Shown here piece by piece: positions 7,823 to 43,800 of a DNA stretch of 64,000 nucleotides. Positions within the stretch are counted from its first letter, which is position 1, and each line of letters starts with the position of its first letter. A program made the position numbers and the translations under genes. Below the pieces are notes generated by a model. The model saw only the letters and a list, made by a program, of their open reading frames with translations, ran no database searches and had not been told where the DNA came from. Location of the stretch: positions 124,001-188,000 of IMG/VR virus record IMGVR_UViG_3300037042_006844. One strand, 5' to 3'.

Positions 7823-8362
7823 ATGACACACGATTTGGCTATAACATATCCCATTCAAAATAAAACTGAATGGAGTTTGATCGATTTCGACGAACCAGCT
7901 TTCTCCAATGCTGGACAGTATTTAACGCATTGGTATCCAAGAATTTTGTGTCCGGTGGGTGAGTGTCGAGAACTCTTGGATTCAGAGAGTGTTTTTTATG
8001 TTCGAGCATATGATCAAAATAGTGCTTTGCATAGCAAACTACTCGACCCTTGGAATAGACCATTCAAAGTTTATTCATGTAGGAGTCCAAAACCCTCCAA
8101 CAACCGCCGAGTTAACATCAACAATCATACAAAGTCGCACAATTGGCACAGTTTTTTAGCAACCATTCCGAAGGGAGTCTGTCCCAGTCGAGTGGTTGGT
8201 GAGGTCTTTATTACCTCAGTATGTTCTGTGCCAGTGGTATGTTTCAACATAGATAGGGCTGCATATTTACAAGTGGAGCACGATATTGTTTTAGAAGAAG
8301 GTAAATTATCGATGAATTATGGCATCAGATCGCCCGTTGTTAAATATCAAACTTTCAACTGA
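7823..8362 (+). CDS. hypothetical protein, YPI/LDPW family copy 1
   Basis: YPIQNKTEW, LDPWNRPF. Confidence 0.65.
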   Translation: MTHDLAITYPIQNKTEWSLIDFDEPAFSNAGQYLTHWYPRILCPVGECRELLDSESVFYVRAYDQNSALHSKLLDPWNRPFKVYSCRSPKPSNNRRVNINNHTKSHNWHSFLATIPKGVCPSRVVGEVFITSVCSVPVVCFNIDRAAYLQVEHDIVLEEGKLSMNYGIRSPVVKYQTFN

Positions 8363-8366
8363 CTCC

Positions 8367-8984
8367 ATGAACCCGAAAAATAATAATTTCAGTTACGTAA
8401 CAGAAACTATACTGCATAAATATCCCGTCACCAACAGCGAATGGATTGTTGTTGGAGTTCCTGGTAGTGTTGGCAATGGGTTAACGTTGTTTGAATATAT
8501 GATGCGGTATTATCCATACATTCTTATTCATGGGATGGACGATACCAACGTTGCGAATGTTCTGCTGGGGGGTATATACAGAAAACATGATGATACACCA
8601 CAAATTAGCTCACCATATTGGGGTGGTGTCGTTACGACGCCGGTTTCATTTCCATCTAACAATGAAAAGCTCTATTTTGTTCGAACACCAGAGCGACATC
8701 ATGCCAAATCTGAATATAAACAAGGTTCCGAATTGTTTCTTGATCCTTGGGACCGAGCTTTTATAGCAAGCCCTTGGTCCGCCGATGATAAAAGAATATC
8801 TGGCAAAGCGTATTCTAAAAATTGTTTATCGACGGGAGTTCCTTCTTTTAGAATGGATTGTCATGCATATTGGCATTTGATAAACGAGTATAACAAACAA
8901 ATATTGGGGAGTGTATTTTTTACCACAGTCGATGGAACAATTGCGATCTGTATTAATATTGCAATGGCGGCAACACTCAAATAG
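8367..8984 (+). CDS. hypothetical protein, YPI/LDPW family copy 2
   Basis: YPVTNSEW, LDPWDRAF. Confidence 0.65.
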   Translation: MNPKNNNFSYVTETILHKYPVTNSEWIVVGVPGSVGNGLTLFEYMMRYYPYILIHGMDDTNVANVLLGGIYRKHDDTPQISSPYWGGVVTTPVSFPSNNEKLYFVRTPERHHAKSEYKQGSELFLDPWDRAFIASPWSADDKRISGKAYSKNCLSTGVPSFRMDCHAYWHLINEYNKQILGSVFFTTVDGTIAICINIAMAATLK

Positions 8985-9036
8985 CTTGACCTGCCCCTAA
9001 ATAAAGACTATACTCTCTCTTGCACACACACATTAT

Positions 9037-9417
9037 ATGGCACGAAAAAAGACACAACCACCCAAAATAGACGCAAAGCACAAAAAGCTGATCGCTGATG
9101 CTATTACTCGCAGTTGCAACCGAACCAGCGCATTCCCCAGTCTCACAATGCGGGACATTCGACAGCTATGCAGCCAAATTCCATCTCACTACGACGATTG
9201 TATTGTGAGTTTTGGGTTTGTATTGAAGGATTTTGGAGAAGATCCCGTTGGAAGTGGTATGCATAATTTCGAAATGGCGTTGATACCCGTGAAAAACGTG
9301 TGCGTGCATCCAGATCAAACACATTTGGTTCTATGCGACGACGAATTGAGCGAGTATATGACAACCAAATGTAAACATACATCTCTTCAACAAAACGACG
9401 ATGTGGTCGAGGAGTGA
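9037..9417 (+). CDS. hypothetical protein
   Basis: TTGACC-N17-TATACT promoter upstream. Confidence 0.6.
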   Translation: MARKKTQPPKIDAKHKKLIADAITRSCNRTSAFPSLTMRDIRQLCSQIPSHYDDCIVSFGFVLKDFGEDPVGSGMHNFEMALIPVKNVCVHPDQTHLVLCDDELSEYMTTKCKHTSLQQNDDVVEE

Positions 9418-18559: not shown

Positions 18560-18901
18560 ATGAAACGCATTCTTTTTTCTATGGCTCTGGTTGCAACCGC
18601 ATTGGTGGGGTGTGCCTCACATGAAACCACGGAGTCTCCCCAGCCCCCATCTACTGTGATTTACTATTATGATCCAATGCCCCCTTCGATGTGGATATAC
18701 GAGTCACGTTTTTATCGCCACACACCCAGACCGGGTGTTGTTGTAGCAAGACCTCCGCATCGTGAGCCGCCACATGGGCATGATGATCACAGAGTTGCAC
18801 CAACACCACCAATACCACCACCCGTCAAGGCACCTCCAGTGCATAACAACAACAAAATGCAGCCCCAGCCCGCAAATCGCATACATAATAGCGAGCGTTG
18901 A
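18560..18901 (+). CDS. Pro-rich lipoprotein
   Basis: lipobox LVGC; TATTTAT upstream. Confidence 0.65.
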   Translation: MKRILFSMALVATALVGCASHETTESPQPPSTVIYYYDPMPPSMWIYESRFYRHTPRPGVVVARPPHREPPHGHDDHRVAPTPPIPPPVKAPPVHNNNKMQPQPANRIHNSER

Positions 18902-18932
18902 CAAATTGAGGTGGTTGTGTTAAGATAGTTAA

Positions 18933-18988
18933 ATGGTCGGAATTCCTCCTCTTGGCTAAAGCCGAAGAGGTTTCCTTCCTCCAAAAAT
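18933..18988 (-). mobile_element. solo IS200/IS605 end hairpin remnant
   Basis: cctcttggctaaagccgaagaggtttcc hairpin, resembling ends at 24640-24670; related copy at 40168. Confidence 0.7.
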
Positions 18989-20122
18989 ATGAAAACCTGC
19001 ATTTACCCCGGAAGTTTTGACCCAGTTACATTCGGACATGTTGATATTATCAACCGTGCAGCCAGCACGTTTGACAAAGTTATTGTTGCGGTTGGGATCA
19101 ACAGCAGCAAAAAATATACATTCAAAACTGAACAACGCATACAGTTTCTTAAAAACAATATCAAGCAGAGTAATGTATGTGTAATGCCATTCGATGGATT
19201 GCTGGCGGATTTTGCATACGAAAACAATGCCAAGACCATTATCAAAGGTGTTCGCAACAACCAAGATTTTGATTATGAAAGATTGTTGCACGAAATCACC
19301 ATCACACAGCAAGCTGGAATTGACACACATATTCTGGTGGCAGATCAAAAGTTGAGCCACATCAGCAGCACTGCCGTAAAAGAACTGTGCAAATTTCAAG
19401 GGTTAATTCATGAATATGTTCCCTATGATGTCAAGGAAGCATTGGAGTGGGTGCTGAATGGGCAATTTATTGTGGGAGTCACTGGAGAAATTGGCATGGG
19501 CAAAAGCTATGTCAGTTCAAAGATCGTCGAAAAAACGGATGGCTGGCTTGGATATGTGCATCCAGTGACAAATGTGGATTTGGATAAAGTGGCGCACGAA
19601 TTGTATGAATCGGATGCTCCAGCCCATTTGGAATTGCGAGAAAATATCATTGAACGGTTTCAAATGAAAAGTGGCTTCAGCCGAAAAGAGTTGGGCGATG
19701 TTGTGTTCAATGACATCAATAAACTACAACAACTCAATACTTTGATTCGCACACCACTACTCACATTGCTGCGCAAGAAAATCAGAGAGCACAAGGGTTT
19801 GATTTTGTTGAATGGAGCATTGCTGGTTGAAGGCAACTACTTGTCGCTTTGCAACAACAATGTGGTGGTAGTAGAATCAACAGAGCAGCAACAATTGGAA
19901 AATCTGGAACGTCGTGGGTTGACCGAAAAACAAGTTGAACGTCGATGGGCAAGTCAACTGACCACAGATGGAAAAATCAGACAGATCAACAGAGAAATTG
20001 AAAAGCATGGTCATGGCAAGTGCATCAAATACCAAAATGTTTACGTTGATCCATATCAGGACCATATGAACACGTTTTTGATCAATCCATTGTATAACAT
20101 GATGAGCAATCTTGAGAAATAA
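18989..20122 (+). CDS. coaD-coaE: bifunctional phosphopantetheine adenylyltransferase / dephospho-CoA kinase
   Basis: YPGSFDPVTFGH, KGVR..DFDYE, ISSTAVKE then GVTGEIGMGKS, D.D..AH, R.ELG..VF. Confidence 0.85.
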   Translation: MKTCIYPGSFDPVTFGHVDIINRAASTFDKVIVAVGINSSKKYTFKTEQRIQFLKNNIKQSNVCVMPFDGLLADFAYENNAKTIIKGVRNNQDFDYERLLHEITITQQAGIDTHILVADQKLSHISSTAVKELCKFQGLIHEYVPYDVKEALEWVLNGQFIVGVTGEIGMGKSYVSSKIVEKTDGWLGYVHPVTNVDLDKVAHELYESDAPAHLELRENIIERFQMKSGFSRKELGDVVFNDINKLQQLNTLIRTPLLTLLRKKIREHKGLILLNGALLVEGNYLSLCNNNVVVVESTEQQQLENLERRGLTEKQVERRWASQLTTDGKIRQINREIEKHGHGKCIKYQNVYVDPYQDHMNTFLINPLYNMMSNLEK

Positions 20123-20967: not shown

Positions 20968-21315
20968 GTCAACAACCCCTAGGCTAAAGCCATAGGGGCT
21001 TGAAAGACACCGAGCTTTCTCAGTGATTTACATTCATTTGGCGAATTGACTGTCGCCTGCCCATCAAGTATGTTTCCATACGAGACGGGAAGTTTGGAAC
21101 GATTTCCTATGTTCCGTGCAGCATTTAAGTCTGCATCATACACAATCCCACTCTTCGCATAAAACCTACAACCTCTACGCACACCCTCTTTGATACCACT
21201 AAAACTATCAATTTGAGAAGTGTAAGCAGGGCTAACTAGAATAACATTTTTTCCAATGTTTTCTGCCTTGTAAGTTAATATTCTGCGAAGTTCAAATAAT
21301 GGAACTTGTGCTATA
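20968..21315 (-). mobile_element. tnpB: truncated IS200/IS605 element, tnpB 3' remnant
   Basis: LTYKA..G..V..V.PAYTSQ, DADLNAARNI; end gtcaacaacccctaggctaaagccataggggc. Confidence 0.85.
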
Positions 21316-21521
21316 TGAGCAGTAAATGGATTTCGCCTCCTGCAATTCACAAATCCAAAACATCCAGTTGGAAATATACAAGTTCTATCGAGCAGAGAGA
21401 CTCCTATTTGGAAAATAACGAGCAGGATTTGCTATTGCACAGCAAATTGAACGATCTGGGTTATTATACAAAAGACCAGCTTCCTACGAAAAACTTGGGT
21501 AACAGTGAAAATAAAAAATGA
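21315..21521 (+). CDS. hypothetical protein
   Basis: ORF immediately after IS remnant. Confidence 0.35.
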   Translation: MSSKWISPPAIHKSKTSSWKYTSSIEQRDSYLENNEQDLLLHSKLNDLGYYTKDQLPTKNLGNSENKK

Positions 21522-21671: not shown

Positions 21672-23282
21672 ATGAAAAAACTAGTAAAATGCCCGCCCCT
21701 GCCGAGAATGGCGAAATCGCTGCAAAATACAGATCATGATCCATACACAGCAACCGCCGATATTATTGATAACAGCATCGATGCTGATGCTACAACAATA
21801 AAACTGGATGTTTGCGTGGAAAATAAAGAATTTGTTGTTAGAATTATCGACGATGGATTTGGTATGGATGTGGACGGCTTGCTTGCGGCAATGACTTATG
21901 GCGATCATCGATCTGGAGATGGTGGTCATGGCAAGTTTGGTTTGGGGTTAAAAACTTCCGCAACCAGTATAGGTAATCGATTTGAAGTCCACACAAGAGA
22001 CGAAGACGGCAAAATTCTTCGAGGTAGTTTTGATGTGGACGAGCTTATCGCCGAAGAGGACCCTGACCATCAGTGGGAACATGAAATTAGCGATGAAATT
22101 GGCGACGAAGACGTTTTGTGGTTCAATGAATGTGTGGGGACTGGAACTGGAACAATAGTCACTATAACAAAAATCGACCGAACTAATGCGTCTCAATTTG
22201 CAACGCGTATGAAACAGCATTTGGGACAAGTTTACCGTAACTATTTGGCACCTTCAAAAGATGCAACTATTCCGGGTAAAATCAAAATGTATGTCAATAA
22301 TGCTCTGATTTATGCAGTAGACCCGCTGCTTCGGCATATACCATCCACAAAACCGTATGAAATTCCAATTGAGCTTGCTCCTGGAGAAGTGGTTCACGCA
22401 ACTATAGTCAAACTTGGTAAACTTGAAGCTGAATCAGATAAAGTCGTCGATGAAAATGATGATGACTACCAAAATAATCTCAACACAAATATTCGGAATC
22501 AAGGTGTATATGTCATGAGAAATGATCGGGAGATCATGTCGGCTGATAAAAAGGTGTTTGCGTTTACTTGGCCTGGAAAAGGACACAACAGTATGAATTA
22601 TATTCGAGTGGAATTAGCATATAGTTCAGAACTGGATAAACATTTTCAGCTAAACCATAATAAAACCGCTATTCAAATCCCAAGTCAGAGTATCCGAGAT
22701 AAAATCAAAAGTGCTTTAGTTAATCCGATTAAAGAAATTAAAAGGCAGATAGACGAAGAAAAAGCCGCCGTTCCAGATGGTAAAATGCAGGAAATATTTG
22801 ATGCCATCAATGCTACCCTAATTGAAAAACGGAGAACTCTTATTCTTCCAAAAGGAAAGAGCGAGACCCGTCAGCCGAGCGGCGGAACCAACAATTCTGG
22901 GTCTATACAACCGAAAAACAGTGGCAGGAAAAGAGGCGTGGGGAGCAATCCCAATTTGAATCGAAAAGAAATTGTTCCAACTATCGGTGTTGTTTCCAAC
23001 GGAAAGGGCGGCGCAATATTCGAATACGGACTCAATCTTGATGACGGCAAGCCCGATCAAATGTATGTTAATTGGAACACAGATCATCCATTTTATCAAA
23101 AATTTGTGATTAACCACGCCCCCGATCAACTGATTGCGACGACATATTTGATAATTGGATTAGCAGCCGCATTTCAAATGGAACAGGGCAATTGTTGTTC
23201 TGATGAAAACGACAAATTGGTCGATAATTTGATGGAGAGAATTTCTACCGCCATATCTCAAAATATGAGAACATTATCCTAA
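21672..23282 (+). CDS. MORC-like GHKL ATPase
   Basis: DIIDNSIDA, DDGFGM, GKFGLGLK, GTGT; S5-like QGVYVMRNDREI; NTDHPFY. Confidence 0.85.
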   Translation: MKKLVKCPPLPRMAKSLQNTDHDPYTATADIIDNSIDADATTIKLDVCVENKEFVVRIIDDGFGMDVDGLLAAMTYGDHRSGDGGHGKFGLGLKTSATSIGNRFEVHTRDEDGKILRGSFDVDELIAEEDPDHQWEHEISDEIGDEDVLWFNECVGTGTGTIVTITKIDRTNASQFATRMKQHLGQVYRNYLAPSKDATIPGKIKMYVNNALIYAVDPLLRHIPSTKPYEIPIELAPGEVVHATIVKLGKLEAESDKVVDENDDDYQNNLNTNIRNQGVYVMRNDREIMSADKKVFAFTWPGKGHNSMNYIRVELAYSSELDKHFQLNHNKTAIQIPSQSIRDKIKSALVNPIKEIKRQIDEEKAAVPDGKMQEIFDAINATLIEKRRTLILPKGKSETRQPSGGTNNSGSIQPKNSGRKRGVGSNPNLNRKEIVPTIGVVSNGKGGAIFEYGLNLDDGKPDQMYVNWNTDHPFYQKFVINHAPDQLIATTYLIIGLAAAFQMEQGNCCSDENDKLVDNLMERISTAISQNMRTLS

Positions 23283-23408: not shown

Positions 23409-24685
23409 GTCAATTGACACACGACCCTAAAGGGTCGGTGCTTGCCAGAGAAGAACCTCTGACGATTGGTTGATTGACAGCAACCTGTCCATCGAGTGCG
23501 GAGCACGAGATGGAGTGTTCTTTGTCATATCTAAAAGTGATATTGTTCGCAGCATTTAGGTCTGCGTCCAATACGACTTTATCAAGTCCATAATACCTAC
23601 ATCCTTTACGGACTCCGTTATCAAGACCACGATGGTCTAATTGGGATGTCCAGTGCGGATTAACGATGACCACTTGTTTTCCAAGTGATGCTGCCTTGTA
23701 GGTCAATATGTTCCTGAGAAGGAAATATGGCATTTGTGAATTGCGATTATTAAATCTTCGTCCTTTGAACTTGGATTTAATCTTGGTCAAATCCTCAATC
23801 ACAATGGTATTTGCCTTTGTGGTGAGAAGATGATTTACAACATTGTGTATGTAGTTCTTTGAAAAATGGTGTTCACGTCTGCGGAGTTTGGTTTGCTTAA
23901 CTCTGGTAGAATGTGATTTGTGAGATTGGAGTTTTCTCTTGTTCCAACGTATCTTACGTTTGGTTCGGTTAAACTCATTGCCTTTGATGATAATGCCTTC
24001 ACTGGTAGAAGCAAGTCGTTTGAGTCCCAAATCAACTCCAATACATTTTTTGTTGTCTTGGAATGTTGTGGTATCGTCAAATACAATAGAGAGGAACACT
24101 CTATCGTCTCTTACAAAAAGAGAAGGGTCTTTGAGTTTGTATTTTGAAAATAATTCGTTGACCTTATTATACTTGAGAAGTTTGGCAGTGATACGACCAT
24201 TACAAGTTGTCAGTTTAATGGCGTCTTGACCAATCCAAGTATAGATGCGAGTGTCCAGTTGGATGTTTAGTCGGTTTGTCTCAACTGGTTCTGTGATTTT
24301 ATGGCAATTGGAACGAAGAGATTTGTATTTTGCAACCACGTCTTGTTCTGCCTTAATGACAAACTGACTTGGAAGCATTGGAAGTTGTTCTCGAACCATC
24401 TTATAACATCTTTGGTGAAGAGGCATAAGACCATTACAGGACTTCATTCCAAATCGGATTTTAGATATGATATTGAAAGCATCACGTTTCAACGATAGTG
24501 ATTTGATGAGAGATTGTTTATCCTCATCATTTTCAAAAATCAGTTGAACATTGTATGTTTTCATTATTACTGGATATACATATTGTGAAGAAACAGAAAA
24601 CAACAAACTATTTTGAGAAAGTGAGATATTTTCGTTGCTCCTCCCCTACCCTAAAGGGATAGGGGTTTCCGCAACGAGTGAGAAT
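23409..24685 (-). mobile_element. IS200/IS605-family tnpB-only element
   Basis: end hairpins gaccctaaagggtc and cccctaccctaaagggatagggg; lies between promoter 23375-23402 and RNA ligase ATG. Confidence 0.85.
23410..24564 (-). CDS. tnpB: TnpB RNA-guided nuclease lacking the CxxC Zn finger
   Basis: RuvC GVDLG, IEDL, DADLNAA. Confidence 0.9.
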   Translation of the reverse strand: MKTYNVQLIFENDEDKQSLIKSLSLKRDAFNIISKIRFGMKSCNGLMPLHQRCYKMVREQLPMLPSQFVIKAEQDVVAKYKSLRSNCHKITEPVETNRLNIQLDTRIYTWIGQDAIKLTTCNGRITAKLLKYNKVNELFSKYKLKDPSLFVRDDRVFLSIVFDDTTTFQDNKKCIGVDLGLKRLASTSEGIIIKGNEFNRTKRKIRWNKRKLQSHKSHSTRVKQTKLRRREHHFSKNYIHNVVNHLLTTKANTIVIEDLTKIKSKFKGRRFNNRNSQMPYFLLRNILTYKAASLGKQVVIVNPHWTSQLDHRGLDNGVRKGCRYYGLDKVVLDADLNAANNITFRYDKEHSISCSALDGQVAVNQPIVRGSSLASTDPLGSCVN

Positions 24686-34503: not shown

Positions 34504-34579
34504 CATATTCAAACCCAAGTTTTGAAAAAAAGCGTTTGACTTCTTATCAAACGCTGCTAAGATGAGTTTATCGCTGAGA

Positions 34580-37012
34580 ATGAAAACTATCGCAACCAAT
34601 AACACAGTCACAAACAGTCCAAACCTTACTTCGACTGGATTTACCATCCGTCCGAAGAATTTGGGAAAAATCATCAATATCGTTGAGAACGACATCTATT
34701 CTGATAAAGTTCTCGCCGTTATCCGAGAATATTCCTGCAATGCCTACGATGCCAATATCGAAGCTGGCAAGCGGGAGACTCCCATCGTTGTTTCTCTACC
34801 ATCACGTTTGAGCAGTGAGTTCAAAGTTCGTGATTACGGCAATGGTTTGACCGAAGCTGAAATTCATGAGATTTATACCTCCTACGGTGAATCCACCAAA
34901 GAGGATTCCGATGATTATATCGGTCAGCTTGGAATTGGTAGCAAGAGCGGCTTTGCTTATGGTGAGAATTTCGTTGTGACCAGTTGGAAAAACGGAGTCA
35001 AAACCATTTACAACGCCGTAAAAGGCACCAATGAGCGTCAGATGGTGAAGCTGTTCAGCCTACCTTCCGATGAACCCAGTGGTATTGAAGTGACCATTCC
35101 TGTTAAAAACGGGGATGAGGTATCATTCAAAAACAAAAGCATTGAGTTTTTCAAGTATTGGAAAATCCAACCCAAGCTAATTGGTGCGAGCCAGCAAGAA
35201 ATCGACTCTTTCCAAACCCCAGTAATTCTTGAAGGCAAAGGTTGGCAAATTACCAAATCGTTCAACAGTAAATGGTCGGGTGTGTCTGCGATTGCCGTCA
35301 TGGGCAACATTTCATATCCTATTCAGTGGGGGTTGGTGCAAGATAAACTGCGCACCCATTTGGATTCGATGACCCAGGATAGAACGCTTTTCATGAAGTT
35401 TCTGCCGTTTATCACCAACAATCGGTTCGTGATTCGGTTCGGCATTGGGGACGTTCAGATGGCTCCCAGCCGAGAAGCATTGCAATACACTGACCGCACC
35501 GTTAATGGCATTGTCAAACGCCTTTTGGAAATCAGCAAAGAAATCGAAGCAGTGGTCCTCAATATTTTCAACAATTGCACAACGTTGTGGGAATACAAAG
35601 GTCATCTCAATAACATTTTTGGAAGAGCTTTGGGTGGTGGTTATTACTCTGCTCACGAGACTGTGTTCTATAGTATGTCAAACATTGAAGTGCTTTATGA
35701 TTTGGTTAAAAACAAATTGCATTTCAACGGAGCCAACGTGGTCAGCGCACATTACGAAAATGTTTCTTATTGGGATGTCAACAAAGGAAAAGTATCGATG
35801 GTGCTCCAACCAAAAGCATCTCCATCATTATCGCCAGGAGCAACTTTAAGTAGTAGTATGCAAGAGCCTGCCTACGAGTCAATCGTAACTAGCCATTACG
35901 TTAATAGCCGCGATAAATTGGTAACTGAGTCTCCGAGATTTGGAAACCAGTATTTCAAAATCATTGCCACTCCCCATGCACATTTTGTGATCATGGATAT
36001 TGATCGCAAAAGCAATGTCAAGCAGTGTCTCAAATGGTATATCAGTGAAGGCGCAAAAAATCCTAAATTGAATATTCAGCATCGTGCTCCGAAACTGGTT
36101 TATACACTACAATTTGGAAATGATGCGGTGCGTGCTGCATTTTTCAATGCGTTTAACATCAAAGGTGCTACAATTGTCAATTTCAGCCAAATATTTGAAC
36201 TGTATAAACCATTGATTCCAAAACGGCAGAGTTCTGCTACCAAGCTGGAAGATGATACTGTGTATTGCGGCATGATTAACCCTGGGAACCATTTCAGCTA
36301 CTATCGGTCCCGCAACACGCTCGACGCTCTGGCAGAGTGGAGAGCCAACGTTGATCTCAAAGCTGAAAAAGGGTTTTATGTTGATATGAGCAGTGCCAAC
36401 GGGAATGTTGTGATCAATGGTATGGTGATTACGCCTTGGACATTTTTCAGCAATATCAGTATGCTAAAAAATGCTGGTGTTGATTTTGGTCAAATTACTC
36501 GGGTTCAACTATTCGGTAGTCGCATTATGAATGGGAATAAATTTGATCGCAACAAACAAAATTGGACAAATTTTGTTACATACATGGAACAGTTTCTCCG
36601 GGGCTACGACAAAAGTCCGTTCGTGGCTTCGTCTGTTATACATAAAAGAGTTAATGATCCACATCGACCGTTTTATATTCACAAAGATGCATTGGCGCAG
36701 ATCGCGCAGTATTTTTCAAAAAATCATTTGTTGCACGAATTCCTCGGTGCGTTTCCTTGGATGCCGACCAACATTCAAGATCGGATTGGTATTTTGAATT
36801 CGTTGCACGTTGAGATTGTGCATGGAAAGGATGTTGCGGTTAAAGACACGATGGAACATTATTTTGACACGATCATCAAGAAATATCCCATGCTTAAAAC
36901 ACTGCTATTTGTCCCCAGTTATAAAGATGTGCAGGGTCAGGTCCCAGTGACGATTGTCCAAGAAATTGTTGATTATATTAAACTTGTTGACAGCCTTCAA
37001 AGTAACGGCTAA
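34580..37012 (+). CDS. rIIA: RIIA-like protein
   Basis: IYSDKVLAVIREYSCNAYDA, RDYGNGL, GQLGIGSKS, PSREALQY. Confidence 0.9.
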   Translation: MKTIATNNTVTNSPNLTSTGFTIRPKNLGKIINIVENDIYSDKVLAVIREYSCNAYDANIEAGKRETPIVVSLPSRLSSEFKVRDYGNGLTEAEIHEIYTSYGESTKEDSDDYIGQLGIGSKSGFAYGENFVVTSWKNGVKTIYNAVKGTNERQMVKLFSLPSDEPSGIEVTIPVKNGDEVSFKNKSIEFFKYWKIQPKLIGASQQEIDSFQTPVILEGKGWQITKSFNSKWSGVSAIAVMGNISYPIQWGLVQDKLRTHLDSMTQDRTLFMKFLPFITNNRFVIRFGIGDVQMAPSREALQYTDRTVNGIVKRLLEISKEIEAVVLNIFNNCTTLWEYKGHLNNIFGRALGGGYYSAHETVFYSMSNIEVLYDLVKNKLHFNGANVVSAHYENVSYWDVNKGKVSMVLQPKASPSLSPGATLSSSMQEPAYESIVTSHYVNSRDKLVTESPRFGNQYFKIIATPHAHFVIMDIDRKSNVKQCLKWYISEGAKNPKLNIQHRAPKLVYTLQFGNDAVRAAFFNAFNIKGATIVNFSQIFELYKPLIPKRQSSATKLEDDTVYCGMINPGNHFSYYRSRNTLDALAEWRANVDLKAEKGFYVDMSSANGNVVINGMVITPWTFFSNISMLKNAGVDFGQITRVQLFGSRIMNGNKFDRNKQNWTNFVTYMEQFLRGYDKSPFVASSVIHKRVNDPHRPFYIHKDALAQIAQYFSKNHLLHEFLGAFPWMPTNIQDRIGILNSLHVEIVHGKDVAVKDTMEHYFDTIIKKYPMLKTLLFVPSYKDVQGQVPVTIVQEIVDYIKLVDSLQSNG

Positions 37013-38713: not shown

Positions 38714-40111
38714 ATGAATAAAAACATCTGTTTAACTACTGACAGCTACAAGCTAAACCATTGGAATCAATACCCTCGTAACACCGAGATTGTGTATAGT
38801 TATTTCGAGTGTCGCAAAGGAGCAACCTTCGCCGAAACCCCGTTCTTCGGGCTTCAATACATTATTAAAAGCCACCTTGAGGGCGCAGTCGTGACCAGGG
38901 AGAATATTGAGAAGGCAGCTAGGCTTTGCAAATTCCATTTTGGCGACGAGCGTTACTTCAACCGTGAGGGCTGGGAATACATCCTCAATAATTGGGGAGG
39001 TAAACTTCCAGTCGTTATCAAGGCTGTTGAGGAGGGAACTGTGGTTCCGGTCAACAACGTGTTGATGACCATTGAGAATGTGGGCGGTGCCATGACGGCT
39101 TGGCTCACCAATTTCCTTGAGACGATTTTGTCCCAAGTATGGTATCCCACAACCGTTGCAGCTTTGAGCCGTGAGGTCAAAAAGAATATCAAAGAATATC
39201 TTGATTTAACCAGTGAGGGCGGACTGCTCAATTTCGGACTGCATGATTTTGGGTTCCGGGGGGCATCGTCTTGGGAATCTGCTGGTATTGGTGGTGCGGC
39301 TCATCTAATCAACTTCCTTGGCACCGATACTTTGGTCGCGATGGAGGTCGCCATGAACTATTACAATGCAAACCTCGAAGGATTAGCATACAGTGTGGCA
39401 GCAACCGAGCACAGTGTGATGACTGCTTTGGGCAAGGACGGTGAGGAAACGGTCGTCGAGAATCTGCTCAATGAATATCCCACGGGTATTCTTTCTGTGG
39501 TCTCCGATAGCTACGACATCTACAATTTTGTTAACAACATCGTTGGACGCAAATTTAAGGATTGGATTCTTGAGCGTGATGGTGTGTTCGTGGTTAGACC
39601 AGATTCCATTACTCCGAGCCATCCAACTCCTGAGCAGGAAATGGTTTGGATTATGTGGAGTCTTTGGGACAATTTTGGTGGCATTATAAACAGCAAGGGA
39701 TTTAATGTTATCAATCCCAAGGTTCGTGTTCTTTGGGGCGATGGAATCGATTTGGAAGGTATCAAAAAGATTCTGTGTGCTGTTGCCGATGCTGGATTTG
39801 CAACCGAAAATATCGCATGTTTCGGAATGGGTGGCGGACTCTTACAGAAAGTCAATCGTGATACACAGCGTTGTGCATTCAAATCGTCTGCACAGTATCG
39901 CAACGGTCAGTGGTTTGATATTTTCAAGAGTCCCAAGGATATTTCCAAGGCTTCCAAAAAGGGCAAGCTCAAGCTCACCAAGATTGACGGCAAGTTCGTT
40001 ACTGTTGGTGAAAACGATCCCGGTGAGGATTATTTGAAGGTTGTGTTTACGAATGGTGTGCTGGTCAAGGAAATTGACTTTGCAACCGTTCGCAAGAACG
40101 CTGCTCTATGA
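38714..40111 (+). CDS. nadV: nicotinamide phosphoribosyltransferase
   Basis: TDSYK, LHDFGFRG, ATEHS, SVVSDSYD, RPDS, GDGI, FGMGG.L. Confidence 0.95.
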   Translation: MNKNICLTTDSYKLNHWNQYPRNTEIVYSYFECRKGATFAETPFFGLQYIIKSHLEGAVVTRENIEKAARLCKFHFGDERYFNREGWEYILNNWGGKLPVVIKAVEEGTVVPVNNVLMTIENVGGAMTAWLTNFLETILSQVWYPTTVAALSREVKKNIKEYLDLTSEGGLLNFGLHDFGFRGASSWESAGIGGAAHLINFLGTDTLVAMEVAMNYYNANLEGLAYSVAATEHSVMTALGKDGEETVVENLLNEYPTGILSVVSDSYDIYNFVNNIVGRKFKDWILERDGVFVVRPDSITPSHPTPEQEMVWIMWSLWDNFGGIINSKGFNVINPKVRVLWGDGIDLEGIKKILCAVADAGFATENIACFGMGGGLLQKVNRDTQRCAFKSSAQYRNGQWFDIFKSPKDISKASKKGKLKLTKIDGKFVTVGENDPGEDYLKVVFTNGVLVKEIDFATVRKNAAL

Positions 40112-40167: not shown

Positions 40168-40213
40168 AAATGGTCGGAATTCCTCCCCTTAGGGGTTTCC
40201 TTCCTCCAAAACT
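40168..40213 (-). mobile_element. solo IS end remnant with shortened hairpin
   Basis: aatggtcggaattcctcc...ggtttccttcctccaaaa shared with 18933. Confidence 0.7.
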
Positions 40214-40266
40214 ATGAAATGGATTAATCCCCTTGACTTCTATAAAATCTGTGGTATACTTTAGAT

Positions 40267-40977: not shown

Positions 40978-41958
40978 ATGAACGTGAACACTCTAAAGTT
41001 ATTTGCGGGAACCAGCAACGTTCCACTTGCTGAACGTATAGCTTCCAATTTTTTGAACTCCAAACTCGGCGATATTTTTCACCACAAATTTCCCAGCGGA
41101 GAAACATATTGCCAATTTCGTGAGAATATTCGTGGGTGTGATGTGTTTTTGATTCAAAGCATCACTGCTCCCGCCAACGAAAATTTGATGGAATTGTTGG
41201 TGATGGCGGATGCTGCTAGACGCGCCAGTGCAGACCGCATTACTGCAATCATTCCCTATTTTGGCTATGCCAGACAAGATAGAAAAGAGAAAAGCAGGGT
41301 GCCGATCACTGCCAAGCTCGTTTTGGACTTGATCGAAGCGAGCGGAATTGACCGTGTGGTAACTATGGATTTGCACAGTCCACAGGTCAGTGGCTTCACC
41401 AACCTTCCGTTCGACCATCTGACCTTTGAACCCGTATTGAACAATTGGATTAGAAACAAATACCATAGTTTGGCTTTGCGAGACAGTGTTATTTTGATGG
41501 CACCCGATGTTGGAGCCGTCAAACGTGTGGAAAAATACGCAACCACGCTTGGCACTGACTTTGGATTCATCAGCAAAAAGCGTGTGGGTGATGATACGGT
41601 TGAATTGCAAAGCATTGTTGGTGACGTGGCTGACAAGCACGTTGTTATCATCGATGATCTGACCGAGAGTTGCGGAACCATGATTCAAGCTGCCAAGGCT
41701 TGCAAACACAATGGAGCCAAAAATGTGACATGTGCGGTGACTCATGGAGCTTTCACGAATATTGGTGTGGAACGTTTGTGTGAAACATCCAGCATCGATC
41801 ATTTGGTTCACAGCAACACAGTGAATCATGCATGGGACACAAACATGGATATGTGCAAAGACCCTCGCAGCATCACACAGCTTGATGTCAGCATGTTGTT
41901 TGCCAAAGCAATCAGCAGCATTCACAACAACGAAAGCATCAGTGAATTATTTGTATGA
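40978..41958 (+). CDS. prs: ribose-phosphate pyrophosphokinase
   Basis: FPSGE, PYFGYARQDRK, DLHS, APDVG, IIDD..SCGT, THG. Confidence 0.95.
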   Translation: MNVNTLKLFAGTSNVPLAERIASNFLNSKLGDIFHHKFPSGETYCQFRENIRGCDVFLIQSITAPANENLMELLVMADAARRASADRITAIIPYFGYARQDRKEKSRVPITAKLVLDLIEASGIDRVVTMDLHSPQVSGFTNLPFDHLTFEPVLNNWIRNKYHSLALRDSVILMAPDVGAVKRVEKYATTLGTDFGFISKKRVGDDTVELQSIVGDVADKHVVIIDDLTESCGTMIQAAKACKHNGAKNVTCAVTHGAFTNIGVERLCETSSIDHLVHSNTVNHAWDTNMDMCKDPRSITQLDVSMLFAKAISSIHNNESISELFV

Positions 41959-42212: not shown

Positions 42213-42287
42213 GGGGTCTAAGCTTTAATGGTGAAGCAAGCGGCTTTTAACCGCTAGAAGACGGATCGTTACCGTCAGGCCCTACCA
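42213..42287 (+). tRNA. tRNA-Lys(TTT)
   Basis: cloverleaf, anticodon loop ct-ttt-aa, encoded CCA; atypical T-loop ATCGTTA. Confidence 0.85.
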
Positions 42288-42303
42288 AATTTACAGTTAA
42301 AAT

Positions 42304-42379
42304 GGGGTTATCGTCTAATGGCTAGGACGGGAGACTTTCAATCTCCAAATCGTGGGTTCAATTCCCCGTAGCCCTACCA
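42304..42379 (+). tRNA. tRNA-Glu(TTC)
   Basis: ggaga-ct-ttc-aa-tctcc, GTTCAATT, CCA. Confidence 0.9.
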
Positions 42380-42387
42380 TTTTCACT

Positions 42388-42610
42388 GTCAGGTCAATAA
42401 TGACAGACCGTTAGCAATAAGCGGTGTCAATGTGCAAAAAAATTCAAGTGGTATAGCACATCTGACGTTATAGATTCCACTTGATGGTGGAGGGGCGCGG
42501 AATAGCCCCCTAGACAAACAGATTGACGGATTGATATAATCGAAGGATATTATATCTAATGCAACAGATAAATCCGATATAATGGTTTGTCGAGAGTTTG
42601 ACATAACTCT
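42388..42610 (+). ncRNA. unknown multi-stem pseudoknotted RNA
   Basis: at least 8 helices including 8-bp loop pairing tcaagtgg/ccacttga. Confidence 0.6.
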
Positions 42611-42623
42611 ACAACAACATATG

Positions 42624-42699
42624 TCTGGTTGCGGGGATGAGCCAATGGTGTCTCGGTTATCCGATTGGATCGAGATTCAATAACCCTACAATCGGACCA
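42624..42699 (+). ncRNA. tRNA-sized CCA-ended non-cloverleaf RNA
   Basis: ctggttg/caatcgg stem + ACCA; no T-arm. Confidence 0.5.
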
Positions 42700-42709
42700 A
42701 TTTTATAAT

Positions 42710-42786
42710 TGCGGAATAGAGTTCTGGTGAACTCCGGTGTCTCATAAGCACTCGCTAGAAAAGTTCGATTCTTTTTTCCGCTACCA
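42710..42786 (+). tRNA. tRNA-Met(CAT), partly initiator-like
   Basis: ct-cat-aa loop; 1:72 mismatch; lacks 3 G-C anticodon-stem pairs. Confidence 0.8.
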
Positions 42787-42791
42787 ATTTC

Positions 42792-42885
42792 GGTTCTGTA
42801 GTTTAACTGGTAAAACCCCATACTTATAATATGGTAATCGCTAGATGTGCGTGACTTCTCGGTTCGAATCCGAGCAGAACCACCA
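42792..42885 (+). tRNA. tRNA-Ile(TAT) with long variable arm
   Basis: ccata-ct-tat-aa-tatgg, ~23-nt V region, GGTTCGAATCC, ACCA. Confidence 0.8.
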
Positions 42886-42949
42886 AATTTATGACGAACG
42901 TGTCATAAAAAAACAAAGTTACATTGAATTAATACTAATATAATAGAAT

Positions 42950-43276
42950 ATGAAAAAGATACTTCTAACAGTTGCAACCCTCTCTCTTCTTTTGACCGCT
43001 AGTGCGGTTGATACCAAGGAACTCTACGATTCACAATGCTCCAAGTGTCATGGAACAAATGGCAATGGTGTGACCAAGATGGGTCAAAAGCTCAATGCGA
43101 AGGATTGGACCGATGTCAAGATTCAAGCCGCAATGACCGAGACCAACATGGTCAAGGCAATTAAGGTGGGCATTAAAGATGCCGAGGACAAGACTCGCAT
43201 GAAGGCATATTCAGATATGACTGATGCCGATGTGACGAATTTGGTTACGTATATCAAAACCTTCAAAAAGCAATAA
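42950..43276 (+). CDS. class I c-type cytochrome, exported
   Basis: signal peptide, CSKCH, distal RMKAY Met. Confidence 0.9.
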   Translation: MKKILLTVATLSLLLTASAVDTKELYDSQCSKCHGTNGNGVTKMGQKLNAKDWTDVKIQAAMTETNMVKAIKVGIKDAEDKTRMKAYSDMTDADVTNLVTYIKTFKKQ

Positions 43277-43294
43277 CATCGTATATAACATCGT

Positions 43295-43624
43295 ATGAAG
43301 AAATCATTGATGCTCGGGGTTTTGATTCTCAGCGGAATGTTGTGTCAAGCACAAAACGCTGGAACCAACGAATTGTATAACAGCAAGTGCAGCAAGTGCC
43401 ATGCAAAAGATGGCTCGGGCAACACACTGATGGGCAAAAAGTATAGTGCGAAAAACTATACAGATGCAGCCGTCCAAAACAAGCTTACTGATGAAGCTTT
43501 TGATAAGTCCCTCAAAGAGGGTTACACCGATGCCGAAGGCAAGAAAGTAATGCAGGCTTTTCCAGAGCTTACGGCACTGGAGCGCAAGGAACTCATCAAA
43601 ACGATGCGGTCCTTCAAGAAATAA
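43295..43624 (+). CDS. class I c-type cytochrome, exported (paralog)
   Basis: signal peptide, CSKCH, distal VMQAF Met. Confidence 0.9.
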   Translation: MKKSLMLGVLILSGMLCQAQNAGTNELYNSKCSKCHAKDGSGNTLMGKKYSAKNYTDAAVQNKLTDEAFDKSLKEGYTDAEGKKVMQAFPELTALERKELIKTMRSFKK

Positions 43625-43643
43625 GATTGACATATCAATTTAT

Positions 43644-43716
43644 GCGGAATTAGTGTCATGAGGAGCACGGCTATCGACCAGATAGCAAGGTTGGTGCAAG
43701 TCCAAATTCCGCTCCA
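43644..43716 (+). tRNA. atypical tRNA-Gly-like (ACC)
   Basis: gcggaat/attccgc + T + CCA; loop cg-acc-ag; T-loop TGCAAGT. Confidence 0.65.
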
Positions 43717-43724
43717 CTTTTTCA

Positions 43725-43800
43725 GGGCTCTTAGCTTAATTGGTTAAGCAGCAAACTCATAATTTGTTGAGTGGGGGTTCGAGTCCCTCAGGGCCCACCA
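43725..43800 (+). tRNA. tRNA(CAT), probably Ile2
   Basis: gggctct acceptor, ct-cat-aa, GTTCGAGT, ACCA. Confidence 0.85.

What the first reader, a model, noticed from the sequence alone, without database searches (positions are those of the whole stretch)
18989..20122. Phage-encoded CoaD-CoaE fusion (last two steps of CoA synthesis)
Seen: complete CoaD motifs joined to a P-loop CoaE domain behind an early promoter. Known: most bacteria encode these separately. Inference: it regenerates CoA from 4'-phosphopantetheine, by analogy with NAD reconstitution, perhaps against a CoA-cleaving defence or to bypass feedback inhibition.
Basis: partly seen in the sequence, partly recalled or inferred. Interest (0 to 1): 0.66.

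Follow-up and report, generated by a model that had tools for sequence, protein, structure and literature searches.

The report
Phage bifunctional CoA synthase (CoaD-CoaE)
A 303-kb T4-like jumbo phage carries one early gene that fuses the last two enzymes of coenzyme A synthesis; the gene is real, intact and conserved in a whole clade of such phages, but why a phage needs it (a general cofactor supply or an answer to an unknown host defence) is still open.

Summary
The ORF at 18989-20122 (+), 377 aa, is real. Residues 1-155 pass NCBIfam's equivalog model for CoaD (162 bits, cut-off 103). Residues 158-345 pass the one for CoaE (82 bits, cut-off 66). Catalytic motifs are intact, the AlphaFold model is confident (pLDDT 88.5, pTM 0.87), and dN/dS is 0.08-0.17 in both domains. 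The window lies in a 303.6-kb IMG/VR virus record with a T4-type capsid gene.

The gene sits behind a sigma70-like TTGACA-17-TGnTAAGAT promoter and a conserved leader hairpin. This roughly 100-bp PeSL-like cassette recurs seven times in the genome.

The fusion is not unique. At least 448 relatives exist. A 43-member clade holds the T4-like jumbo-phage copies, and a sister group holds every member I found in cellular DNA (CPR, DPANN, Planctomycetes). The phage encodes no earlier CoA step. In related phages the fusion lies 1.5-2 kb from a Nudix, NMNAT-like and NAMPT module, and next to an HD/phosphodiesterase-fold gene that is elsewhere fused to CoaD or CoaE.

The biochemical reading, 4'-phosphopantetheine to CoA, is well supported. 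The counter-defence reading is untested, and my literature searches found no CoA-depleting defence. Verdict: a new variant of a known kind, of moderate interest.

The parts
18898..18926 (+). Sigma70-type extended -10 promoter: TTGACA (18898-18903), 17-nt spacer, TGn, TAAGAT (18921-18926)
   Evidence: Consensus scan, 10 of 12 matches plus TG. The motif class occurs 35 times in the genome against 0.95 in shuffles, mostly under 100 nt upstream of ORFs. An identical 29-mer recurs at G000:237447 (-).
18927..18988 (+). 62-nt 5' leader of the repeated PeSL-like cassette. It ends in an invariant pyrimidine-rich stretch TTTCCTTCCTCCAAA.AT directly before the ATG, and there is no Shine-Dalgarno sequence near the start.
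   Evidence: Seven copies in the genome, aligned as A4. The sequence was read directly.
18948..18970 (+). Conserved leader hairpin: CCTCTTGGC, loop TAAA, GCC(G)GAAGAGG. It has a 9-bp stem with one bulged G.
   Evidence: RNA fold of -19.2 kcal/mol, z = -3.1, with 0 of 200 shuffles folding as well. Four double-compensated pair changes occur in two other copies: TA to CG in one, and TA to AT, GC and AT in the other.
18989..20122 (+). CDS of the CoaD-CoaE fusion protein, 377 aa plus stop
   Evidence: AlphaFold2 model with pLDDT 88.5 and pTM 0.87.
18989..19453 (+). CoaD (phosphopantetheine adenylyltransferase) domain, residues 1-155. The TFGH motif is at 19028-19039.
   Evidence: TIGR01510 scores 162.3 bits against a cut-off of 103.3. 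It is 37-40% identical to solved PPATs. Foldseek gives target TM-scores of 0.87-0.94 and rmsd 1.3-2.1 A to PPAT structures. dN/dS is 0.08-0.17.
19460..20023 (+). CoaE (dephospho-CoA kinase) domain, residues 158-345. The P-loop GEIGMGKS is at 19484-19507, and the DxD motif is at residues 197-199.
   Evidence: TIGR00152 scores 82.2 bits against a cut-off of 65.55, and PF01121 scores 78.9 bits. It aligns to the DPCK structures 2if2, 1jjv and 1vhl and to the kinase domain of mouse CoA synthase 2f6r. dN/dS is 0.13-0.15.
20024..20119 (+). Variable C-terminal tail, residues 346-377, with a predicted helix at 358-376
   Evidence: It is not conserved in the family alignment. The model's pLDDT here is 70-88. 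Constraint is relaxed, with dN/dS or pN/pS of 0.34-0.59.

Best explanation
The gene encodes a single-chain, bacterial-type bifunctional CoA synthase.

The N-terminal CoaD domain adenylylates 4'-phosphopantetheine with ATP to give dephospho-CoA. The C-terminal CoaE domain phosphorylates the 3'-OH to give CoA. This chemistry is inferred from homology.

The gene is transcribed by host sigma70 RNA polymerase from a PeSL-like early promoter cassette. That is inferred from motif and context.

The phage makes none of the earlier pathway enzymes. The enzyme must therefore draw on the host's pool of 4'-phosphopantetheine, from ongoing synthesis or from turnover of CoA and acyl carrier protein, and pull it into CoA independently of the host's own CoaD and CoaE.

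The most likely role is cofactor maintenance during infection. It would work alongside the NAD-salvage genes that the same phage lineage carries, keeping CoA and acetyl-CoA available while host gene expression is shut down.

In reduced-genome cells (CPR, DPANN) the same fused enzyme appears to serve as a stand-alone salvage route. That shows the two-domain protein is a self-sufficient module.
For: Enzyme identity:
- Both halves pass curated equivalog cut-offs.
- Catalytic motifs are invariant in 22 diverse members and align to solved PPAT and DPCK structures.
- The model is confident and the N-domain superposes on PPATs at a target TM-score of about 0.9.

Selection:
- dN/dS is 0.08-0.17 in each domain, against 0.34-0.6 in the tail.
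- A 43-member clade with SH-aLRT 99 holds the window's protein and the three other members checked in T4-like phage contexts (contexts).

Only the last two steps are phage-encoded: no CoaBC, PanK-III, ACPS or PP-binding match in the 303 kb.

Early expression: the promoter motif is enriched 35 to 0.95, and the cassette recurs seven times with a covarying hairpin. This matches published PeSLs.

Cofactor theme:
- In related phages the fusion lies 1.5-2 kb upstream of NUDIX, NMNAT-like and NAMPT genes.
- NAMPT lies within 8 kb of CoaD in 9 of 80 IMG/VR loci from several lineages.
- The window carries NAMPT and a Prs-like gene.

Recurrent coupling of CoaD and CoaE in phages: the same-family fusion (11 loci), a distant fusion, a reversed CoaE-CoaD fusion, and adjacent separate genes in about 11 loci.

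Stand-alone salvage in cells: the CPR genome that carries the fusion shows no CoaBC or PanK-III.
Against: - No enzyme assay and no expression data.
- The host is unknown, so host CoaD and CoaE status, and the size of the 4'-phosphopantetheine pool, are unknown.
- Nothing shows that CoA becomes limiting in infection, or that the phage enzyme escapes CoA feedback inhibition.
- The window's phage lacks the HD/phosphodiesterase-like partner that accompanies the fusion in most related phages. If that partner supplies the substrate, this phage relies on another source.
- The CPR genome's completeness is unknown.
- The record is about 89% complete, so a missing gene might lie in the unsequenced part.
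Confidence: 0.6

Rival explanations
1. Counter-defence by CoA reconstitution. A host immune effector destroys CoA or strips 4'-phosphopantetheine from carrier proteins, and the phage enzyme rebuilds CoA from the fragment. In relatives it would work together with the HD/phosphodiesterase-like partner. This would be the CoA counterpart of NARP1, NARP2 and NARP3.
For: - The fusion is physically linked to NARP2-type genes (Nudix, NMNAT-like, NAMPT) and lies near an Acb3-family gene in relatives.
- NAMPT clusters with CoaD in 9 of 80 viral loci.
- The gene is early and sits in a hyperplastic, PeSL-rich region typical of adaptive genes.
- It starts from a breakdown product rather than from pantothenate.
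- Three separate gene-fusion links tie an HD/PDE-fold enzyme to CoaD or CoaE in phages.
Against: - No CoA-depleting or ACP-targeting defence was found in two full-text searches.
- The NARP papers do not mention CoA.
- The same fusion serves ordinary metabolism in CPR, DPANN and Planctomycetes cells.
- The neighbourhood evidence comes from relatives. In the window the NAD genes are 19 kb away.
Confidence: 0.2
2. The CoaD domain moonlights as the missing NMN adenylyltransferase. This phage has NAMPT and Prs but, unlike its relatives, no NMNAT gene, so CoaD might complete NAD synthesis.
For: - The window's phage has no homologue of its relatives' NMNAT-like, Nudix or NADAR genes.
- The only other PF01467 match in the genome is weak, at 17.9 bits.
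- CoaD and NMNAT share the same nucleotidyltransferase fold.
Against: - NMNAT models score 33 bits or less against cut-offs of 112 or more, while the CoaD equivalog scores 162 bits.
- The domain is orthologous, at 57-58% identity, to copies in phages that do have a separate NMNAT-like gene.
- Host NadD or NadR could do the job.
- The Prs-like gene might instead be an Adps of a NARP1-type route, which needs no NMNAT.
Confidence: 0.05
3. A neutral passenger: a recently captured cellular gene carried in a hyperplastic region with no role in infection.
For: - It lies among ORFans and TnpB transposase genes, behind a mobile PeSL-like cassette.
- Its neighbours differ between related phages.
Against: - Purifying selection acts on both domains.
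- A deep clade holding all the checked T4-like phage copies, 55-92% identical to the window's protein, keeps every catalytic residue.
- CoaD and CoaE have become coupled independently in other phage lineages.
Confidence: 0.05

Closest known systems
Bacterial CoaD (PPAT, TIGR01510) and CoaE (DPCK, TIGR00152), for example the E. coli structures 1B6T/1H1T and 1VHL
   Same: Each half is a member by the curated score, the motifs and, for CoaD, the fold. The predicted reactions are the same.
   Different: The two enzymes are joined in one polypeptide with no linker. Identity to solved enzymes is only 35-40% for CoaD and lower for CoaE. There is an extra variable tail of about 30 residues. The gene is encoded by a phage.
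Cellular members of the same CoaD-CoaE fusion family (Paceibacterota/CPR, Woesearchaeota and Micrarchaeota/DPANN, Planctomycetes)
   Same: The architecture and length are the same, identity is 44-48%, and the junction and catalytic residues are conserved. They form the sister group in the tree.
   Different: They sit in ordinary chromosomal contexts. In the one CPR genome checked, no upstream pathway genes were found. The fusion is a minority trait: about 5 or 6 of 301 sampled genomes of that phylum.
Eukaryotic bifunctional CoA synthase (COASY, PPAT then DPCK)
   Same: The domain order and the overall two-step chemistry are the same. The kinase half aligns to mouse COASY 2f6r at E = 3.7e-8.
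   Different: The PPAT half here is the bacterial CoaD type. NF001985, a second pantetheine-phosphate adenylyltransferase model that I take from memory to be the archaeal/eukaryote-like type, scores 15 bits against a cut-off of 104. The fusion is therefore analogous and independent, not orthologous.
Phage NAD reconstitution pathways NARP1, NARP2 and NARP3
   Same: These are phage-encoded short pathways that rebuild an essential cofactor from a late intermediate. In related phages they are physically close to the fusion.
   Different: The cofactor is different. For NAD the depleting defences and the rescue are shown experimentally. For CoA neither is known.
Viral coaD and coaE auxiliary metabolic genes reported from snow viromes (PMC11097641)
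   Same: The same two enzymes were noted as abundant in viral fractions, with their purpose stated to be unknown.
   Different: That report counts annotations. It describes no fusion, no context and no phylogeny.
PeSL (promoter-early stem-loop) cassettes of T4-type phages (PMC2839356, PMC4122927)
   Same: [quoted passage not shown] It has a near-consensus sigma70 promoter and a stable stem-loop, occurs in many copies, and precedes accessory genes.
   Different: Here the stem-loop lies about 20 nt downstream of the -10 element, inside the transcribed leader, with no U-tract. No Shine-Dalgarno sequence is present. Recombination between copies was not examined.

Membership tests
CoaD / phosphopantetheine adenylyltransferase (TIGR01510) | Score above the curated equivalog cut-off over the full model | tested here: met
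   162.3 bits against 103.3, model positions 1-152 of 155.
CoaD / phosphopantetheine adenylyltransferase (TIGR01510) | The (T/H)xGH nucleotidyltransferase motif and the C-terminal ISxT/S phosphate-binding motif | tested here: met
   T14-F-G-H17 and I125-S-S-T128. H17, S126 and S127 are invariant in 22 members and align to 1o6b and 4nah.
CoaD / phosphopantetheine adenylyltransferase (TIGR01510) | PPAT fold | tested here: met
   Foldseek finds PPAT chains with target TM-scores of 0.87-0.94 and rmsd 1.3-2.1 A.
CoaD / phosphopantetheine adenylyltransferase (TIGR01510) | Adenylylation of 4'-phosphopantetheine, and hexameric assembly | not testable with these tools
   This needs an enzyme assay and structural work.
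CoaE / dephospho-CoA kinase (TIGR00152, PF01121) | Score above the curated cut-offs | tested here: met
   TIGR00152 scores 82.2 against 65.55, and PF01121 scores 78.9 against 27.
CoaE / dephospho-CoA kinase (TIGR00152, PF01121) | The P-loop GxxGxGK(S/T) and the conserved Asp (DxD) after strand 2 | tested here: met
   G166-E-I-G-M-G-K-S173 and D197-L-D199. These align to 2if2, 1jjv and 2f6r. G166, G171, K172, S173 and D199 are invariant.
CoaE / dephospho-CoA kinase (TIGR00152, PF01121) | Phosphorylation of the 3'-OH of dephospho-CoA | not testable with these tools
   This needs an enzyme assay.
Eukaryotic CoA synthase (COASY) | PPAT then DPCK in one chain | tested here: met
   Domain order.
Eukaryotic CoA synthase (COASY) | A PPAT half of the eukaryote/archaeal type | tested here: not met
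   The N-domain is the bacterial CoaD type. NF001985 scores 15.2 bits against a cut-off of 104. That this model represents the archaeal/eukaryote-like type is my recollection, not a tool result.
NARP-like phage cofactor-reconstitution counter-defence | A known host defence depletes the cofactor | tested here: inconclusive
   Two full-text searches found none for CoA. Absence from a text library is not proof.
NARP-like phage cofactor-reconstitution counter-defence | Expression rescues the phage from such a defence | not testable with these tools
   This needs infection assays.
NARP-like phage cofactor-reconstitution counter-defence | Genomic association with other anti-defence or cofactor genes | tested here: met
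   Met in relatives: 1.5-2 kb from NUDIX, NMNAT-like and NAMPT genes. In the window NAMPT and Prs are 19 kb away.
PeSL regulatory cassette | A sigma70-like early promoter joined to a stable stem-loop, repeated across the genome upstream of accessory ORFs | tested here: met
PeSL regulatory cassette | The stem-loop acts as a terminator, and copies mediate recombination | not tested
   No U-tract follows the stem. No paired genomes were compared.

The most novel reading that the evidence does not exclude
T4-like jumbo phages carry a dedicated 'CoA reconstitution pathway'. An HD/phosphodiesterase-fold enzyme, found adjacent to the fusion in most relatives and itself fused to CoaD or to CoaE in other phages, would release 4'-phosphopantetheine from a damaged or targeted molecule such as holo-ACP or a CoA derivative. 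CoaD-CoaE would then rebuild CoA from it. The pathway would counter a host immune mechanism, not yet discovered, that attacks CoA or the phosphopantetheine arm, in the way that NARP1, NARP2 and NARP3 counter NAD depletion.
Probability: 0.15. Interest if true: 0.85.

Novelty: new variant of a known kind. Interest (0 to 1): 0.5.

Why it matters
Phage reconstitution of NAD has become a major theme in phage-host conflict. CoA is the other universal nucleotide-derived cofactor, and nothing comparable has been described for it.

This work defines a clade of bacterial-type bifunctional CoA synthases in jumbo phages. It shows that both halves are under selection and that the gene often travels with NAD-salvage genes. 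It also uncovers a recurrent third partner, an HD/phosphodiesterase-fold protein.

Together these findings give a concrete, cheap experiment: express the protein, assay it, and screen it against defence libraries. That experiment could establish CoA supply as an auxiliary metabolic need of large phages. It could also point to an unknown class of CoA- or ACP-directed defence.

The fused enzyme is also a compact two-step CoA synthase that could be useful in biocatalysis.

Tried and rejected
- Megablast of 6 kb around the gene against 50,697 phage records found no match.
- tblastn of the protein against the same records found no cultured phage with the fusion. Only two uncultured 735-kb records cover 80% or more of the protein, and each does so in two pieces.
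- An IMG/VR scan with the single protein found nothing. It worked only with the alignment.
- Rfam gave only tRNAs in the window, so there is no known riboswitch in the leader.
- ACP, PPTase, Nudix, CoaBC and PanK-III searches of the phage genome were all negative.
- The HD-like partner was sought in the window's own phage by protein and by profile and was not found. It has no Pfam, NCBIfam or PDB sequence match. Only structure places it in the HD/PDE superfamily. My idea that it is an AcpH-like enzyme has no direct support.
- I first read the window's NAMPT and Prs pair as NARP1. I now leave this open, because the Prs-like protein matches canonical Prs-like sequences over its full length at about 40% identity.
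- DNA for the closest relative, P0003, could not be fetched, so dN/dS was computed on more distant pairs, some with saturated dS.
- I did not use the large representative-protein search or the domain-by-domain word search, because relatives were plentiful.
- I did not run complex prediction, because the report makes no binding claim.
Full report
OBSERVATION

Pfam finds PF01467 at residues 5-132 and PF01121 (CoaE) at residues 161-333. NCBIfam's equivalog models are both passed: TIGR01510 (coaD) at 162.3 bits against a cut-off of 103.3, and TIGR00152 (coaE) at 82.2 bits against 65.55. NMN and NaMN adenylyltransferase models reach at most 33 bits against cut-offs of 112 or more.

Against solved structures the N-terminal half is 37-40% identical to bacterial PPATs over residues 4-153. 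The C-terminal half aligns to dephospho-CoA kinases, including the kinase domain of mouse CoA synthase. The TFGH motif (14-17), K41, R89, S126-S127, the P-loop GEIGMGKS (166-173) and D199 of the DxD motif are invariant in an alignment of 22 diverse family members. The junction between the domains is itself conserved and has no linker.

An AlphaFold2 model built on that alignment has pLDDT 88.5 and pTM 0.87. Its N-domain superposes on PPAT crystal structures at target TM-scores of about 0.9 and rmsd 1.3-2.1 A. No solved chain covers both domains.

THE GENOME

The window is bases 124001-188000 of a 303,564-bp IMG/VR virus record that CheckV rates about 89% complete. The record has a T4-type Gp23 major capsid gene. 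The nearest cultured relatives of that capsid are Flavobacterium phage immuto (59% over 78% of the protein) and Microcystis phage Mel-JY01 (51%). This is a deep-branching T4-like jumbo phage with an unknown host. The 6 kb around the gene has no nucleotide match among 50,697 phage records.

PROMOTER AND LEADER

A TTGACA-17-TGnTAAGAT site lies at 18898-18926. The motif TTGACA-N13-15-TGnTAnnnT occurs 35 times in the genome against 0.95 in shuffles, nearly always just upstream of an ORF. It is therefore a real promoter class that the host's sigma70 polymerase can read, which is the early class in T4-type phages.

The roughly 100 bp from the promoter to the ATG recur six more times in the genome. 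They contain a 9-bp hairpin at 18948-18970, with a fold energy of -19.2 kcal/mol and z = -3.1. The hairpin keeps its pairing through four double-compensated changes in two copies.

This fits the published PeSL cassettes of T4-type phages: a near-consensus sigma70 promoter plus a stem-loop, about 100 bp long, lying upstream of accessory genes in hyperplastic regions. Here, however, the stem lies in the transcribed leader and no Shine-Dalgarno sequence is present. The neighbourhood agrees with that setting. It holds ORFans, a DUF3307 membrane protein, a lipoprotein-like ORF, one whole and one truncated TnpB, and an RNA ligase.

HOW COMMON IS THE FUSION?

The word-based protein search returned 448 relatives. 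All 120 listed carry both domains, at 44-92% identity and lengths of about 330-420 aa.

I checked the contexts of several members:
- P0029 (58% identity, 314-kb contig) and P0039 (56%, on 15 contigs, seven of them 0.2-1 Mb) lie in T4-like phage DNA.
- P0054 (51%) and P0008 (68%) lie in phage-like DNA.
- P0087 (46%) lies beside archaeal lipid genes in a Woesearchaeota contig.
- P0085 (47%) lies beside RuBisCO and CysRS.
- P0110 (45%) lies beside MreB and T2SSE in a Planctomycetes contig.

A maximum-likelihood tree of 131 fusions gives three groups:
- a 43-member clade (SH-aLRT 99) with the window's protein and the T4-like phage copies;
- a 21-member clade in which all five members with a known context are viral or phage-like;
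- a 56-member clade holding all seven members checked in cellular contexts, plus two IMG/VR contigs.

The viral or cellular label needs only two changes on the tree. The tree is unrooted, so the direction of transfer is open. Most rows have no context label.

Among GTDB representative genomes, 79 of the 80 best CoaD loci hold CoaD alone. The exception is a Paceibacterota MAG. In 301 sampled genomes of that phylum, about 5 or 6 have the full fusion and 282 have no match with this query.

In IMG/VR, 80 loci gave the following:
- 11 fusions of the same family;
- one distant fusion;
- one reversed CoaE-CoaD fusion, seen in two loci;
- about 11 loci with adjacent separate coaD and coaE genes;
- about 50 loci with CoaD alone.

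Phages have therefore coupled these two enzymes repeatedly. No cultured phage in the 2025 INPHARED set carries the fusion.

SELECTION

Nei-Gojobori estimates within the phage clade give dN/dS of 0.08-0.17 for the CoaD part and 0.13-0.15 for the CoaE part. The C-terminal tail gives 0.34-0.6. Synonymous sites are saturated in the most distant pairs.

PATHWAY CONTEXT

The phage genome has no match to CoaBC, type-III pantothenate kinase, PPTase, carrier-protein or Nudix families. Only the last two CoA steps are viral, and the substrate must be host 4'-phosphopantetheine. The CPR genome that carries the fusion likewise shows no CoaBC or PanK-III. That fits the fused enzyme acting as a self-sufficient salvage module, although the completeness of that genome is unknown.

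In related phages the fusion lies 1.5-2 kb upstream of NUDIX, an NMNAT-like gene and NAMPT, a NARP2-like gene set. NAMPT lies within 8 kb of CoaD in 9 of 80 viral loci. The window's own phage has NAMPT (38714-40111) and a Prs-like gene (40978-41958) 19 kb downstream. It has no NMNAT, Nudix or NADAR homologue.

A THIRD PARTNER

In most related phages a gene of about 197 aa sits directly upstream of the fusion. In other viral loci it is fused to CoaD (L035 and L036, 378 aa), fused to CoaE (L080, 411 aa), or placed between coaD and coaE (L067).

The protein has no Pfam, NCBIfam or PDB sequence match. It does carry invariant YHNxxH, HD and DxD motifs, and it folds with pLDDT 94. Its closest structures are class-I phosphodiesterase catalytic domains (Z 14.3, 189 of 197 residues aligned, rmsd 3.3 A) and HD hydrolases. 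The search tool itself warns that a Z of this size is common for helical models.

Its substrate is unknown. One possibility, which is inference only, is that it releases 4'-phosphopantetheine from a phosphodiester such as the one in holo-ACP. The window's phage lacks this gene.

INTERPRETATION

The biochemical reading, 4'-phosphopantetheine to dephospho-CoA to CoA, rests on equivalog-level homology, intact motifs, fold and purifying selection. I rate that part at about 0.85.

The physiological reading I favour is early, host-independent maintenance of the CoA pool as part of a cofactor-supply gene set. It is inferred from context. I give the combined explanation, chemistry plus this role, 0.6.

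However, I found no CoA-directed defence in the literature, and the NARP papers do not mention CoA. I rate it at 0.2.

An NMNAT side activity and a neutral passenger are each unlikely, at about 0.05.

Viral coaD and coaE have been listed as auxiliary metabolic genes in snow viromes, with their purpose stated as unknown. I found no paper on the fusion or its phage clade.

LIMITS

- There is no assay, no expression data and no host.
- Context labels cover a minority of the tree.
- The tree is unrooted and was built with a quick search.
- Negative searches in an 89%-complete record and in MAGs do not prove absence.
- The large representative-protein search was left unused, because relatives were plentiful.

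Noticed in passing
window 38714-40111 (+) and 40978-41958 (+): A NAMPT-family gene (PF18127 and PF04095) and a PRPP-synthetase-like gene lie two genes apart. By gene content this looks like NARP1 (Namat plus Adps). However, the NAMPT is very close to the NARP2-type NAMPT of related phages (E = 6e-250). The Prs-like protein matches canonical Prs-like sequences over its full length at about 40% identity. No NMNAT was found in the genome. Which NAD route this phage uses is unresolved.
   Followed up: partly
window 18897-18995, with further copies at G000:237448-237350, 267072-266993, 270594-270532, 244065-244004, 216424-216384 and 225758-225707 (all -), and a partial copy at window 40168-40219: A repeated cassette of about 100 bp holds a promoter, a hairpin and a leader, and ends in an invariant TTTCCTTCCTCCAAA.AT-ATG-AAA. 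The hairpin covaries, and there is no Shine-Dalgarno sequence. It is PeSL-like. The pyrimidine-rich leader without a Shine-Dalgarno sequence may say something about the host's mode of translation initiation.
   Followed up: partly
L002:7411-8004, with homologues in L010-L014, L018-L020, L035/L036, L067, L072, L080, L170 and L171: A protein of about 197 aa with an HD/phosphodiesterase fold and no Pfam family lies next to, or is fused with, CoaD or CoaE in many large phages. It is absent from the window's phage.
   Followed up: partly
L053 and L076 (IMG/VR), ORF 7992-9086: A 364-aa protein has the reverse domain order, CoaE at residues 2-169 and CoaD at residues 191-326. This is an independent fusion of the same two enzymes.
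   Followed up: no
window 20979-21350 (-) and 23410-24606 (-): One truncated TnpB (only the C-terminal TNB part, 123 aa) and one full-length TnpB (IS605 OrfB/Cas12f-like, 398 aa) flank a 536-aa HATPase_c_3 protein at 21672-23282. A second HATPase_c_3 protein of 816 aa lies at 34562-37012.
   Followed up: no
window 42213-43800: A cluster of five tRNA genes: Lys-UUU, Glu-UUC, Met, Ile-UAU and Met. The tRNA-Ile(UAU) call is 94 nt long, which is unusual for a type-I tRNA.
   Followed up: no
window 18560-18901 (+): A 113-aa ORF directly upstream has a lipoprotein-type signal (LVGC lipobox) and a proline- and histidine-rich tail. It matches no family. The closest relative's contig lacks it and has DUF3307 directly upstream of the fusion.
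   Followed up: no
L002:87-797 (related phage): An Acb3-family gene (PF25187) lies about 7 kb upstream of the CoaD-CoaE fusion, in the same block as a phosphomannomutase and DUF2828/DUF7788 genes.
   Followed up: no
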